Assembly (NCBI RefSeq): GCF_963853765.1 | Contig: NC_088855.1 | Span: 53,568,001-53,632,000, forward strand | Direction: 5' to 3' | DNA length: 64,000 nucleotides | Source: Magallana gigas | Taxonomy: Eukaryota | In this document: positions 13,054 to 20,333 of the stretch, piece after piece | How the letters are laid out: the number at the start of each line of letters is the position of its first letter | How positions within the stretch are numbered: position 1 is the first letter of the stretch | The notes under the pieces: generated by a model | Told to the model about the DNA's origin: nothing | The model's database searches: none | The model's input: the letters and a program-made list of their open reading frames with translations, nothing else | Made by a program: the position numbers and the translations under genes

Positions 13054-13839
13054 TCAGCTCTTCGCGACTTTTGCAATGTTTTCTGGGAGATTGGCACCAT
13101 TTGAGATCACAAAGTCTTTCAATAGTTCAAGCTGCTTTGTAACATTGTCCAGTTTACCTTTTAGCTGCATGTTTTCCGATTCTAGATACTGCAGGCGATT
13201 TTCCATTTCCACCTGCTTCAGCTTAGCCTTTTCACGACATTTGCGAATTGCAAGATTATTTCTCGCTCTCTTTTCGAAATATTCACGGGTACCTTTTTCT
13301 GGCTGCCTCTTCTTTTTCACCGGTCCGCCAGCTGAGGGTTTCCTACCTGGTCGTCCCCGGGGGCGAGGGGTATAATCTACGTCCATAGGACTAGGGGGTG
13401 GGGTCACAAAGGAAGAGATATCCTGATCGGAGCTATCCGAATCCTCGTTAGATCCGGACAGGGAATTTTCCAGCTCACCGTCAGAACTCACTGACCCCGT
13501 GGAGTGAAGAGTTTCTCTGACCGACTGTAAACACGAGGAGACCTGGTCCGGATTAAGCACAAATTCCAAGTTCTCGTACCGGCTGAGCTGTGCGATCAGG
13601 GCCTGGTCAGGCACGGCCTGGGTCTGCACGGTGACCGGGGCAGCGTTTACCAGCGTGGTGAAGGCTTCGTTTCCAGACACGCTCTGGACAATGTCATTAG
13701 ATTTTATATCCAGAATGAGTTTCTCCAGCGTCTCGTCATTCACCTGTGTGGAATTGTTGAAAAGTTCTTGGATATCCACAGAATTTTCCAGCACCGGGTC
13801 CAAATCGAATGGGGTTCTTTCCATCATAATCTGTGACAT
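13054..13839 (-). CDS. C/EBP: CCAAT/enhancer-binding protein, activator (alpha/beta/delta) class, paralog A; intronless, 261 aa from the first ATG
   Basis: bZIP EYFEKRARNNLAIRKCREKAK plus leucine zipper. N-terminal ENSVDIQELFNNSTQVNDETL resembles the C/EBP-alpha activation box [26 protein letters not shown] phospho-motif. The ORF track starts at a GTG (13875); the first ATG is at 13839. Candidate polyA signal at 12301-12306. Confidence 0.93.
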   Translation of the reverse strand: MSQIMMERTPFDLDPVLENSVDIQELFNNSTQVNDETLEKLILDIKSNDIVQSVSGNEAFTTLVNAAPVTVQTQAVPDQALIAQLSRYENLEFVLNPDQVSSCLQSVRETLHSTGSVSSDGELENSLSGSNEDSDSSDQDISSFVTPPPSPMDVDYTPRPRGRPGRKPSAGGPVKKKRQPEKGTREYFEKRARNNLAIRKCREKAKLKQVEMENRLQYLESENMQLKGKLDNVTKQLELLKDFVISNGANLPENIAKVAKS

Positions 13840-13874
13840 GCAGTAATGTATTGGAGCGGCCGCTGCTAATACCA

Positions 13875-13883
13875 CTAGGCCAT
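13875..13883 (-). other. Two-codon out-of-frame uORF (ATG GCC TAG) in the 5' leader of C/EBP paralog A
   Basis: The only ATG between the predicted TSS (about 13950) and the main ATG. It lies 44 nt upstream of the main ATG and is out of frame. Confidence 0.6.
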
Positions 13884-13977
13884 CCGGGAGGCTCGGCTAT
13901 GCGGCTTGAGAGAGTTTGCTCGATGTATTCGCTACGACGGTAATCCAAGGATTGCGGTTTTCCTGGCCGGCCTTTAA

Positions 13978-15993: not shown

Positions 15994-17066
15994 GGAAGTG
16001 ATCACAAAACGATTTAACGCCCTCACATTTAACAATTGCTAATTGTTAAACATTAAAAAAAATGTCACCCCCCCCCCCATAAAAAAATCAAATAACACTC
16101 GCTGACCAAATTTTGTTAAATCTAGAATAATTATATTGCTTTTTTTTCTAATTTGTATATTGAAAACTTTCATACGTTATCGTTATGTCGGCGCGCGATA
16201 TTCATTTTTATAAAATTGATAAACAGCAAATGATTGCACGCGTGACAGCTACATGTACGGTTTCAAAGGATGGGGAGTGACGGACTTCCTTTGAAAATTA
16301 GCCCCCTCCCTAGGAGGAGCAAATAAATAACCCCCTTTTATGGTTAAGTACGAGCTACTTTTATGGTGGACTTGTTAATTGCTCCAACTGATTTTTCAGT
16401 CTTAATCAAAATTTCCGAATGCTTTATCTGTCTTCGATACATAAAATAGAGGTCACGCCCCATCTGAATAAACGTTTATCTTTTACTCTCATTTTGCGAT
16501 TGTTTTACGGATAATTATAGTGGTTTTTCATGTTTGTTTGTTTACTTGCATGTGTTAGTTCATCATCAAAAATCAAGATTTTAAGAAATTAATCATTTTG
16601 CTCATTGATATTCCGGATTTGAAAAGACATCAAGCAAGAGGGAGTGCCAATGATCTAATATTATTCATTGTAAAAGGGGGATGACAGTCATTGCTTGATC
16701 AACCTGAATAACACTTGTGCATTCCATCGCCAATGGAAAAACCTAGTGAGTGTCACACACGTGTTTCCATTAGAGACAGTGACTTTATAGTTAAAGATTA
16801 TTGTAAAATAAAATAAGACGAGAGTAAATGTTAATATTTCATTTTTAATGATACATTTAAGTAAAAAAGTTAATAAGTATTTAAAAATACAACAACAATA
16901 ACTTGTTACTTCAACAGCATTGTCGCCGTTCAGTTCTGTGTTTGTACAATTTTTACAAGTAAAAAAGATCAAGTTTATACTATCTACATGGTAAACAGTG
17001 TCACTATATACAGGAAAACCCGAACAGACATCGGGCCTTATCACTCGTCTATTGCTTGATCGTGTG

Positions 17067-17999
17067 TCACCTGGACATGATTTCGTCGAACTTTGTGGGT
17101 AAGGAGGCTCCAACATTGATGAATAAACTTTTGAGCACATTAAGTTCTTTTGTTAGTAAGTCTAATTTCTTTTGTAAGTTTTCGTTTTCTGTTGACAATT
17201 CGTGCACTCTTTGTTCGGTCTCTTGCTGCTTTTTCTTCGCCTTGTCCCGGCTTTTTCTCACTGCGAGATTGTTCCTCACTCGCTTGTCTACATATTCTTC
17301 AGTGCCCTTGGGTGGCTGTTTCTTTCGGTTTGGTCTGAGGGGTCCGGCGGCGGATGGCTTCCTACCAGGACGGCCACGAACTATTTCAAAAGGTGAGGTG
17401 GGAGGGGTGAGAGTCGATGATGTGACGTCGTGCTCCGATTGAGAGGGAGAGTTCACGATACTCTCGATGTCACACGTGCTGTATTCCTCCCCCTCACTGG
17501 CCGACCAGCCGGCCTCCGATATCTTTGATGTTTGCTCTTGGTTTGTCATAAAGTCAAATTCTTTGAATGTAGGCAACACACTGTCTTGTGCAGGTTGCAG
17601 TTCAATAAATGGGACACCCGTAACTGGGTCAGCGGTCTTCTCCCCCAAAATGATGTTCACTAAAGTGGCGTCGTTTACTTGTGTGCTATTGTTCAGTAGT
17701 TGTCGAATGTCGACTGAATTCTCTAAGAGCGGGTCCAAATCAAACTGGCCCTGACTATCTTGCAGAATAGTTGAAACTTTCTTACTTTGCTCAGAATCGT
17801 AGAGTACCGATTCCATCAAATTTTCTTGTGGACATGGTGAACCAGGGAAAATGTTTTCGTCAAATGAAAATACTGGGAAATCCAGCGCCTCAGATTGAGT
17901 GTTCACACCCAAAACAGACTCGAGAGTCTGTAAAACGTTTACACGCGAATCTTGAAGATTGCGGTTGTTTCGTTGGTTCACACCGGAGTTGTTAGACAT
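17067..17999 (-). CDS. C/EBP: CCAAT/enhancer-binding protein, activator class, paralog B; intronless, 310 aa
   Basis: Canonical basic region EYVDKRVRNNLAVRKSRDKAK plus zipper. Shares FDLDPxLENSVDIxxLxNNSTQVNDxTL, TPPxSP and RGRPGRKPSA blocks with paralog A. The true start may be M1 (17999) or M62 (17816). Confidence 0.93.
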   Translation of the reverse strand: MSNNSGVNQRNNRNLQDSRVNVLQTLESVLGVNTQSEALDFPVFSFDENIFPGSPCPQENLMESVLYDSEQSKKVSTILQDSQGQFDLDPLLENSVDIRQLLNNSTQVNDATLVNIILGEKTADPVTGVPFIELQPAQDSVLPTFKEFDFMTNQEQTSKISEAGWSASEGEEYSTCDIESIVNSPSQSEHDVTSSTLTPPTSPFEIVRGRPGRKPSAAGPLRPNRKKQPPKGTEEYVDKRVRNNLAVRKSRDKAKKKQQETEQRVHELSTENENLQKKLDLLTKELNVLKSLFINVGASLPTKFDEIMSR

Positions 18000-19490: not shown

Positions 19491-19932
19491 ATTGCATCAC
19501 AGATTAAATTGCATGGAAGGCCATTAGTATACAGTGTACATTTGGAAGGATATTCTGTTCAAAATCCCGAGTGAATGTCAGGTGAGTGCATGGTATATAA
19601 TATAATACCCAGTCATTAATGAAACAAGTTATAATATTTTGATTTTGACGAGTTATTCGTGTTACTTTTGGTTTGTTGATATTGACAATTCTACTTCCGG
19701 TTTTTGATTTTGCAATCAAATATTCAATTGTTCTTTACAAAATTGCTTCACTGCTCGTTTCTTCTAAATTTAATTAATACAAATAACTATTATCAATAGT
19801 TTTGTTAAACAATTAATATCTTTGAGACTACATCTTGCTCAAACCTGAGGGTTGAAATCTTATTGCATCAGGTTCTAAATCAAGAGAAAGGGAGAACACT
19901 CCGATATTACTATCTTTAGTTCATGATGCAAT
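19491..19932. promoter_or_regulatory. Three perfect C/EBP-ATF response elements (TGATGCAAT) at the 5' end of C/EBP-gamma
   Basis: attgcatca at 19491-19499 and 19862-19870; tgatgcaat at 19924-19932; one-mismatch attgcttca at 19742-19750. Confidence 0.75.
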
Positions 19933-19955
19933 ATCTTTTTGTTTCAGATAAAAAG

Positions 19956-20333
19956 ATGGCACCAAAGCGTCCTGATTATGAGGGTTCAGATGGAGAGTCA
20001 TATGGTAAACCATCGAAACGTTCAAGAATGATGGAGAAAGACACAGATGAATATCTCAAAAGGAGAGAAAGAAATAACATTGCTGTTAAAAAGAGCAGGG
20101 AGCGTTCAAGACAAAAAGCCAAGGAAACAATCGAGCAAGTTAATAGGTTGAGGGCAGAAAATGAAATGTTGGAACAGAAGGTTGAAATTCTTTCAAAAGA
20201 ACTTAGTGTTTTAAAGGACTTATTTTTGGCTCATGCCGGCAATGTTGCCCAGTCAGAGCGTGCCATAGAAGCAACAGAATCAAGAGCTCCTATTCCCGAT
20301 CATCAGTACAGCTCATCAAAACAAAAACAGTGA
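19956..20333 (+). CDS. CEBPG: C/EBP-gamma (short bZIP without an activation domain), 125 aa; possibly 130 aa from a spliced upstream ATG
   Basis: DEYLKRRERNNIAVKKSRERSRQK...LRAENEMLEQKVEILSKELSVLKDLFLAHA. Acceptor tttgtttcag ends at 19947 and donor CAG|GTGAGT starts the intron at 19582. An ATG at 19575 splices in frame (MSDKKM). The ORF-track start at 19923 is intronic. AATAAA at 20490 and 20634. Confidence 0.93.
   Translation: MAPKRPDYEGSDGESYGKPSKRSRMMEKDTDEYLKRRERNNIAVKKSRERSRQKAKETIEQVNRLRAENEMLEQKVEILSKELSVLKDLFLAHAGNVAQSERAIEATESRAPIPDHQYSSSKQKQ

What the first reader, a model, noticed from the sequence alone, without database searches (positions are those of the whole stretch)
13300..13375. 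AT-hook-like motif just upstream of the bZIP in both activator C/EBPs
Seen: PRPRGRPGRKPSA in paralog A and VRGRPGRKPSA in paralog B (about 17345-17385), one of the few blocks conserved between otherwise divergent middle regions. Known: (P)RGRP with flanking basic residues is the AT-hook minor-groove binder, and vertebrate C/EBP-beta cooperates with the AT-hook protein HMGA1 in trans. I do not recall an AT-hook in vertebrate C/EBPs. Inference: these proteins carry a built-in minor-groove anchor suited to an AT-rich genome.
Basis: partly seen in the sequence, partly recalled or inferred. Interest (0 to 1): 0.7.

Follow-up and report, generated by a model that had tools for sequence, protein, structure and literature searches.

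The report
AT-hook-like arm in oyster C/EBPs
Two neighbouring oyster C/EBP transcription-factor genes carry a conserved short basic motif with the RGRP core of an AT-hook just before their DNA-binding domain; it probably gives an extra, weak contact with DNA, but only part of it is conserved in other bivalves and the function is untested.

Summary
PRPRGRPGRKPSA (13330-13368, minus strand) and VRGRPGRKPSA (17349-17381, minus strand) lie in two expressed, intronless oyster C/EBP genes. Each sits 32-34 residues before the basic-region NN, in a disordered stretch 17 residues before the predicted bZIP helix.

It is not chance. Among 232 family members, RGRP occurs 28 times in that 18-residue window and nowhere else (0.68 expected). 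In A versus B the ten residues are identical, while 8 of 10 codons differ synonymously.

The AT-hook reading is only partly supported:
- The RGRP core is kept in oysters, pearl oysters and scallops. It becomes RGKP, CRKP or RRTP in other bivalves, where the constant part is PGRKPS..GP[IV]R.
- Pfam AT_hook does not score it, although native controls pass.
- The flanks fit canonical hooks poorly.
- RGRP-type cores recur at the same place in several unnamed non-molluscan C/EBPs.

Drosophila Xrp1 is a published AT-hook plus C/EBP-class bZIP protein whose hook is functionally required, so the architecture has a precedent.

Best reading (about 0.4): a weak, AT-hook-like DNA-contacting arm beside the C/EBP half-site. 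The main rivals are a nuclear localisation signal or a regulatory or docking motif. The link to an AT-rich genome is unsupported.

The parts
13054..13839 (-). Paralog A coding sequence (C/EBP-family bZIP, 261 aa from the ATG; the mechanical ORF runs to 13875 from a GTG)
   Evidence: ORF list. Pfam bZIP_2 at 2.6e-12. Orthologues of 256-261 aa in other oysters. Continuous RNA contigs from 12900 to about 13918-13933.
13330..13371 (-). Paralog A motif TPRPRGRPGRKPSA (ORF residues 169-182): PRGRP core followed by GRKP
   Evidence: The same block occurs in Saccostrea and Pinctada A-type orthologues.
13306..13317 (-). Paralog A KKKR cluster (ORF residues 187-190), a monopartite-NLS-like block between the motif and the bZIP helix
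   Evidence: Read directly from the translation; the NLS reading is inference.
13135..13284 (-). Paralog A bZIP_2 match (ORF residues 198-247)
13387..13404 (-). Paralog A TPPPSP proline-directed Ser/Thr sites, just upstream of the motif
   Evidence: the kinase-site reading is inference.
17067..17999 (-). Paralog B coding sequence (C/EBP-family bZIP, 310 aa)
   Evidence: ORF list. bZIP_2 at 1.1e-15. A 99%-identical 310-aa protein from transcript assemblies. RNA contigs from 16118 to about 17996, no joints inside the ORF.
17349..17381 (-). Paralog B motif VRGRPGRKPSA (residues 207-217): RGRP core without the N-terminal proline, followed by GRKP
   Evidence: No secondary structure and pLDDT about 60 in the AlphaFold2 model; the helix starts at residue 234.
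17319..17327 (-). Paralog B RKK cluster (residues 225-227); with R213-K214 it fits a bipartite-NLS spacing of 10
   Evidence: Read from the translation; the NLS reading is inference.
17145..17303 (-). Paralog B bZIP_2 match (residues 233-285)
17391..17408 (-). Paralog B TPPTSP proline-directed Ser/Thr sites upstream of the motif
19923..20333 (+). C/EBP-gamma-like short bZIP (136 aa) that lacks the motif; context and a likely dimer partner

Best explanation
The block is a conserved, intrinsically disordered, basic Pro/Gly-rich arm N-terminal to the C/EBP basic region. In bivalves it reads x-[RG]-[RK]-P-G-R-K-P-S-[AG]-x-G-P-[IV]-R. In oysters, pearl oysters and scallops its first half reads (P)RGRP, the core of an AT-hook. 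The most likely mechanism is as follows. While the bZIP helices sit in the major groove of the C/EBP site, the arm is tethered by about 17 flexible residues and lies on the DNA next to the half-site. The RGR would enter the adjacent minor groove, and GRKP plus the following R/K cluster would touch phosphates. This would add affinity and a mild preference for A/T-rich flanks, as a weak hook rather than an HMGA-grade one. It may be modulated by the neighbouring TP/SP and RKPS sites. What is shown: sequence, position, conservation, disorder and expression. What is inferred: DNA contact, groove, and the effect on specificity.
For: RGRP core with nearby basic residues in A and B, and full PRGRP in A, matching the literature definition (PMC11526092, PMC3353895, PMC5028900). 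Fixed position 32-34 residues before NN; 28 RGRP inside the window, 0 outside, 0.68 expected. Protein-level constraint: 10 of 10 residues identical with 8 of 10 synonymous codon differences between A and B. Both paralog lineages have Pinctada orthologues with the motif. A third paralog just outside the window has GRPGRKP. RGRP or GRP cores occur at the same place in at least five further non-bivalve clusters: RGRPRSS, KRGRPRT.., VRGRPKGS, KRGRPRTVT, VGRPRAS. The arm is disordered and directly N-terminal to the DNA-binding helix. The conserved Pro and Gly are not what a plain NLS linker needs. Precedent: the Xrp1 AT-hook next to a C/EBP-class bZIP is required for function, and RGR-to-AAA abolishes it (PMC6946401, PMC6219715).
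Against: The RGRP core is not kept across bivalve orthologues: RGKP and RNKP in unnamed bivalve-type relatives, CRKP in heterodont clams, RRTP in unionids. Only 16 of 50 distinct bivalve sequences have GRP. The constant part, PGRKP, resembles the MeCP2 hook 2 core RGRKP, which has barely detectable AT-hook activity (PMC5028900). Pfam AT_hook (cut-off 17.4 bits) reports nothing for A, B, D or nine homologue peptides, while native hooks from the same genome score 17.8-21.5 bits. A rough matrix gives A 5.2 and B 6.5, against 28.6 for the HMG-I consensus and 19.6 and 16.5 for the MeCP2 hooks; 2-4% of shuffles reach those values. B has no basic residue or proline N-terminal of RGRP. No binding data exist, and no protein-DNA model could be made.
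Confidence: 0.4

Rival explanations
1. The block is mainly part of a nuclear localisation signal. R-K of GRKP is the upstream basic pair of a bipartite NLS, and the downstream half is the RKK, RKR or KKKR cluster before the bZIP helix.
For: In B, R213-K214 is followed by 10 residues and then RKKQP. Heterodont sequences have RK, 9 residues, then RKREP. A has the monopartite-like KKKR. AT-hook-like and NLS functions overlap in other proteins; the LEDGF tripartite element is cited in PMC6219715.
Against: The spacing is only 7 in paralog A. NLS linkers are normally free to vary, yet P, G, P and G-P-[IV] in and after the block are nearly invariant in 50 distinct bivalve sequences. From general knowledge of vertebrate C/EBPs, the basic region itself supplies nuclear import, so an extra NLS is not obviously needed.
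Confidence: 0.2
2. The block is a regulatory or docking motif rather than a DNA contact. It could be a basophilic-kinase site (R-K-P-S), an arginine-methylation target (RGR), or a short linear motif bound by a cofactor, placed between the proline-directed TP/SP sites and the bZIP.
For: Ser or Thr follows RKP in 45 of 50 distinct bivalve sequences. TPPxSP sites lie 5-10 residues upstream in A and B. Non-bivalve C/EBPs carry a different conserved motif at the same place, GRN[TP]LKA[TK]PPSK or G[TS]RPAPGKA, which does not look like a hook.
Against: The Ser is replaced by A, L or I in some species, while PGRKP is present in all 61 bivalve-type sequences recovered (anchored on PGRKP itself). No known docking consensus was matched. 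The repeated appearance of RGRP cores at this site in unrelated clades is easier to explain by DNA proximity.
Confidence: 0.2
3. The arm binds RNA or holds the factor on chromatin non-specifically, in the manner of extended AT-hooks, without reading A/T-rich flanks.
For: The flanks differ from canonical DNA hooks. The region is very rich in R, K, P and G.
Against: Nothing specific. Its position directly next to a sequence-specific DNA-binding helix favours DNA.
Confidence: 0.1
4. Chance similarity with no function of its own.
For: The motif is short, and AT-hook-like tetrapeptides arise easily in basic disordered regions.
Against: Positional enrichment is 28 against 0.68 expected. There are ten identical residues against saturated synonymous sites, and the motif is retained in two paralog lineages that predate the oyster-pearl oyster split.
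Confidence: 0.03

Closest known systems
Drosophila Xrp1 (AT-hook plus C/EBP-class bZIP; partner Irbp18, the C/EBP-gamma homologue)
   Same: A single RGRP-type hook lies immediately N-terminal of a C/EBP-class bZIP within a C-terminal DNA-binding region of about 104 residues (Xrp1 565-668; oyster B 207-310). The Xrp1 hook is required in vivo, and RGR-to-AAA inactivates it (PMC6946401, PMC6219715). A C/EBP-gamma-like gene sits next to the oyster genes.
   Different: Xrp1 is reported only from Diptera and evolves fast. The oyster proteins are conventional C/EBPs with a canonical basic region. Orthology and the hook-to-basic-region spacing could not be compared because no tool gave the Xrp1 sequence. 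The oyster hook fails Pfam AT_hook.
HMGA1/HMGA2 AT-hooks (HMG-I consensus TPKRPRGRPKK)
   Same: Paralog A reads TP-RPRGRP, which is the PRGRP core with both prolines and a preceding TP (consensus quoted in PMC5028900; structure in PMC3353895). The region is disordered.
   Different: There is one copy, not three. The C-flank is G-R-K-P instead of K-K, R-K or P-K. It is not detected by PF02178, and the matrix score is 5-6 against 28.6. It is embedded in a sequence-specific factor.
MeCP2 AT-hook 1 (GRGRPKGSG) and AT-hook 2 (KKRGRKP)
   Same: Paralog B, like hook 1, has RGRP without the N-terminal proline. The pan-bivalve GRKP equals the core of hook 2. Both are auxiliary hooks beside a main DNA-binding domain (PMC5028900).
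   Different: MeCP2 hooks need about 25-fold more protein than the HMG-I consensus, and hook 2 is barely AT-specific (PMC5028900). If that applies here, the bivalve-wide part would be a weak, unspecific contact.
Vertebrate C/EBP-beta working with HMGA1 in trans
   Same: A C/EBP site is used together with an AT-hook protein that helps C/EBP-beta bind DNA (INSR and leptin promoters; PMC6043803).
   Different: In vertebrates the hook is on a separate protein. No human bZIP homologue of Xrp1 carries an AT-hook (PMC6219715).
Gastropod C/EBPs (Aplysia, Lymnaea, Elysia and others)
   Same: They carry a basic G/R/P block, GRGRRPHGS, starting at the same distance (-34) from the basic-region NN.
   Different: They read RGRRP, not RGRP, so the hook core is interrupted. 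No function has been assigned.

Membership tests
C/EBP family of bZIP transcription factors | bZIP domain with the C/EBP-type basic region (R-x-R-N-N-x-A-[VI]-[RK]-K-[SC]-R) and a leucine zipper | tested here: met
   Pfam bZIP_2 at 2.6e-12 (A) and 1.1e-15 (B). Signature NNLAIRKCR in A and NNLAVRKSR in B. Nearest named relatives are annotated C/EBP. A long helix is predicted from residue 234.
AT-hook (HMGA type) | Core Arg-Gly-Arg-Pro with the invariant Gly-Arg-Pro | tested here: met
   RGRP is present in A and B; paralog D has GRP only. Definition taken from PMC11526092 and PMC6219715.
AT-hook (HMGA type) | Prolines on both sides of RGR (PRGRP), which steer the backbone out of the groove | tested here: inconclusive
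   Met in paralog A, scallop and Pinctada A-type sequences (PRGRP). Not met in paralog B (VRGRP). The criterion is from PMC3353895 and PMC5028900.
AT-hook (HMGA type) | Basic residues directly flanking the core, as captured by the Pfam AT_hook profile PF02178 (cut-off 17.4 bits) | tested here: not met
   No PF02178 match at E up to 10 for A, B or D as 25- or 32-residue peptides, nor for nine homologue peptides. Three native hooks from the same genome score 17.8-21.5 bits. The rough matrix gives 5.2 and 6.5 against 28.6 for the HMG-I consensus.
AT-hook (HMGA type) | Lies in an intrinsically disordered segment | tested here: met
   In the AlphaFold2 model with a 44-sequence alignment, residues 196-233 of B have no secondary structure and pLDDT 58-65.
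AT-hook (HMGA type) | Binds the minor groove of A/T-rich DNA | not testable with these tools
   No protein-DNA prediction or binding data were available.
Xrp1-like AT-hook bZIP proteins | AT-hook directly N-terminal of a C/EBP-class bZIP | tested here: inconclusive
   The architecture matches at the level of the published description (PMC6946401), but the oyster hook fails the Pfam profile.
Xrp1-like AT-hook bZIP proteins | N-terminal Xrp1-homology domain and reciprocal best similarity to Xrp1 | not tested
   The Xrp1 sequence could not be obtained with the tools: it is not in the papers' text or supplements and not among the listed search hits.

The most novel reading that the evidence does not exclude
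An RGRP-type hook joined to a C/EBP bZIP may be an old protostome feature rather than a fly oddity. On this reading, lophotrochozoan C/EBPs keep it or repeatedly rebuild it at one fixed site, and Drosophila Xrp1, so far an orphan, descends from such a hook-bearing C/EBP that pairs with C/EBP-gamma. That would make the oyster cluster (three hook-bearing paralogs next to a C/EBP-gamma gene) the slow-evolving counterpart of the Xrp1-Irbp18 system.
Probability: 0.12. Interest if true: 0.7.

Novelty: new member of a known kind. Interest (0 to 1): 0.42.

Why it matters
If the arm contacts DNA, molluscan C/EBPs would read more than the 10-bp C/EBP site. A built-in flank reader would do in cis what HMGA1 does for vertebrate C/EBP-beta in trans, and this would affect motif-based target prediction in oysters, where C/EBPs are studied in immunity and stress.

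It would also give Xrp1, the AT-hook bZIP protein central to cell competition in flies and so far without relatives outside Diptera, a set of slowly evolving proteins with the same architecture for comparison.

If the arm is only an NLS or a regulatory site, the finding is a routine lineage-specific linear motif.

Tried and rejected
- **Pfam on whole proteins and peptides**: no AT_hook match. The controls show the tool can find hooks.
- **Sequence search of solved structures with the 25-residue peptide**: only a chance-level hit (E 1.1) to an unnamed chain.
- **ESM Atlas look-alikes of the C-terminal part**: ordinary C/EBP/NF-IL6 clusters, none with an AT_hook label.
- **Literature**: no paper in the library links an AT-hook to oyster or other canonical C/EBPs.
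- **Obtaining the Xrp1 sequence** from paper text or supplements and from the listed hits: failed, so no direct alignment with Xrp1.
- **Naming the taxa of the non-bivalve RGRP-bearing C/EBPs** via cluster members, encoding contigs and a second homologue search: only accession numbers and unnamed records. In the tree they fall in the well-supported non-molluscan clade that also holds Lingula.
- **A small HMM built from native hooks**: returned no output, a technical failure. It was replaced by a simple position matrix, which is overfitted to 11 sequences and should be read only as a ranking.
- **The "suited to an AT-rich genome" idea**: the window has 33.9% G+C, but no data here relate motif state to genome composition. 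Close relatives without the RGRP core argue against a simple link.
- **Complex prediction**: not used, because no protein-protein claim is made.

Full report
**What is there.**
The window (33.9% G+C) comes from an oyster genome. The nearest named relatives of the proteins are from Saccostrea and Ostrea at 77-78% identity.

Two single-exon ORFs lie on the minus strand: paralog A at 13054-13875, with the likely ATG at 13839, and paralog B at 17067-17999. Both match Pfam bZIP_2 (2.6e-12 and 1.1e-15), and both have the C/EBP basic-region signature.
- A reads ...TPPPSPMDVDYTPRPRGRPGRKPSAGGPVKKKRQPEKGTREYFEKRARNNLAIRKCR...
- B reads ...LTPPTSPFEIVRGRPGRKPSAAGPLRPNRKKQPPKGTEEYVDKRVRNNLAVRKSR...

A and B are 42% identical, with a gapped middle region in which this block stands out.

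RNA-seq contigs from several studies cover both ORFs without joints. PolyA reads have the orientation expected for minus-strand mRNAs, and no variant is listed inside either motif.

A C/EBP-gamma-like gene (19923-20333, plus strand) lacks the motif. A fourth family member lies 1.4 kb outside the window (L004 694-1761, 355 aa) and has PPGRPGRKPG.

**More than chance.**
- In 232 family members collected by two searches, RGRP occurs 28 times within the 18-residue window -42..-25 from the basic-region NN.
- It never occurs in the other 62,180 positions. Composition shuffles predict 0.68 occurrences in total. Relatedness inflates the count, but at least six separate clades contribute.
- Between A and B the ten residues RGRPGRKPSA are identical, while 8 of 10 codons differ at synonymous sites.
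- Both lineages have pearl-oyster (Pinctada) orthologues with the motif, so the duplication is old and the block has been kept in both copies.

**What exactly is conserved.**
The 120 closest homologues show a graded picture.
- Oysters, Pinctada, scallops and some unnamed relatives have [P/V/T]RGRPGRKPS.
- Other unnamed bivalve-type sequences have RGKPGRKPS or RNKPGRKPS.
- Heterodont clams (Mercenaria, Mya, Mactra, Dreissena) have CRKPGRKPS.
- Unionids have RRTPGRKPS.
- All 61 bivalve-type sequences have PGRKP at 30-32 residues from NN, followed by [ST] (45 of 50 distinct sequences), then G-P (47 and 49 of 50), [IVL], and R/K (49 of 50).
- Only 16 of the 50 distinct sequences have the GRP triplet.
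- Gastropod C/EBPs, Aplysia included, have GRGRRPHGS starting at the same -34 position.

So the canonical hook core is a variant found in oysters, pearl oysters and scallops, within a broader basic Pro/Gly-rich arm.

Outside molluscs the same site usually carries GRN[TP]LKA[TK]PPSK or G[TS]RPAPGKA. Several unnamed clusters carry clear hook-like cores there: RGRPRSSLKATPPSK, KRGRPRTSS, VRGRPKGST, KRGRPRTVT and VGRPRAS. The insect-like sequences have none. On a short, weakly resolved tree, the motif state changes at least 12 times.

**Is it an AT-hook?**
The literature definition is a core RGRP flanked by positive residues (PMC11526092), nine residues centred on an invariant GRP (PMC6219715). 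PRGRP is the part held in the groove (PMC3353895), and both prolines matter for strength (PMC5028900).
- Paralog A meets all of this. Its TP-RPRGRP closely follows the HMG-I consensus TPKRPRGRPKK quoted in PMC5028900.
- Paralog B has RGRP without the N-terminal proline or any basic residue before it.

The profile test fails. PF02178 (cut-off 17.4 bits) finds 11 hooks elsewhere in this genome, all of the form K[KR]xRGRP[PRK]K. Three of them, given as 32-residue peptides, score 17.8-21.5 bits. A, B, D and nine homologue peptides give nothing at E up to 10.

A rough position matrix built from those 11 hooks gives these scores:
- HMG-I consensus: 28.6
- MeCP2 hook 1: 19.6
- MeCP2 hook 2: 16.5
- Paralog A: 5.2
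- Paralog B: 6.5

The values for A and B are reached by 2-4% of shuffles. The matrix is overfitted and harsh on the G at +1, but it shows that only the tetrapeptide, not the flanks, is canonical.

**Placement.**
An AlphaFold2 model of B residues 196-310, built with a 44-sequence alignment, gives mean pLDDT 84. It has no secondary structure and pLDDT 58-65 up to residue 233, then one long helix from 234.

The motif (208-216) is therefore 17 flexible residues from the start of the DNA-binding helix. By inference, that is enough to reach the minor groove within about one helical turn of the half-site.

**Precedent.**
Drosophila Xrp1 is an AT-hook plus bZIP protein of the C/EBP class. Its hook, basic region and zipper lie together in residues 565-668. 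The hook is required when deleted at the endogenous locus (PMC6946401), and RGR-to-AAA abolishes its genetic activity (PMC6219715).

The latter paper reports that no other bZIP protein in SMART carried an AT-hook and that no human homologue has one. Xrp1 pairs with Irbp18, the C/EBP-gamma homologue, and here a C/EBP-gamma-like gene is the immediate neighbour. I could not obtain the Xrp1 sequence, so common descent is untested.

**Verdict.**

The most likely function (about 0.4) is a weak AT-hook-like DNA contact that supplements the bZIP. It would be strongest in A-type and scallop proteins, which have PRGRP.

The main rivals are a bipartite NLS and a regulatory or docking motif, at about 0.2 each. 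The NLS spacing fits B but not A, and an NLS would not explain the invariant Pro and Gly.

The claim of adaptation to an AT-rich genome has no support.

The finding is a new example of a known arrangement (a hook beside a sequence-specific domain, with Xrp1 as the bZIP precedent), not a new kind. Its main value is as a testable link between canonical C/EBPs and Xrp1.

Noticed in passing
L004 694-1761 (G000:C3:53565534-53566601, plus strand, 1.4 kb before the window start): A fourth C/EBP-family gene (355 aa) has PPGRPGRKPG before a KCR-type basic region and groups with paralog A. The local cluster therefore has four genes (D, A, B, gamma), not three.
   Followed up: partly
window 13723-13809 (-) and 17658-17744 (-): A second conserved block, FDLDP[VL]LENSVDI..L.NNSTQVND.TL, is shared by the N-terminal halves of A and B. 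It is a candidate activation or partner-binding motif.
   Followed up: no
homologues P0054-P0120 and P0128-P0238, 20-40 residues before the basic region: Non-bivalve C/EBPs carry deeply conserved motifs at the same site as the oyster block: GRN[TP]LKA[TK]PPSK in many lophotrochozoan-like sequences and G[TS]RPAPGKA in another large group. Their function is unknown.
   Followed up: partly
window 13387-13404 (-) and 17391-17408 (-): TPPPSP and TPPTSP proline-directed Ser/Thr sites lie 5-10 residues before the motif, and gastropods have SSPGTPGPS there. From memory, this resembles the ERK site region of vertebrate C/EBP-beta and the CDK sites beside HMGA1 hooks.
   Followed up: no
window 16118-17066 (-): RNA contigs show that paralog B has a 3' untranslated region of about 950 nt. 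B coding sequence is covered at word depths in the thousands, against a few hundred for A, in the same runs.
   Followed up: no
window 13225-13290 (-): The paralog A basic region reads NNLAIRKCREKA (Ile and Cys where B and most C/EBPs have Val and Ser). The same changes occur in Saccostrea and Pinctada A-type orthologues and in paralog D.
   Followed up: partly
G000, 11 places listed (for example C3:6981989-6982024, C2:31484441-31485067): Canonical Pfam-positive AT-hooks of this genome all read K[KR]xRGRP[PRK]K. One open frame on contig 2 holds at least three of them.
   Followed up: no
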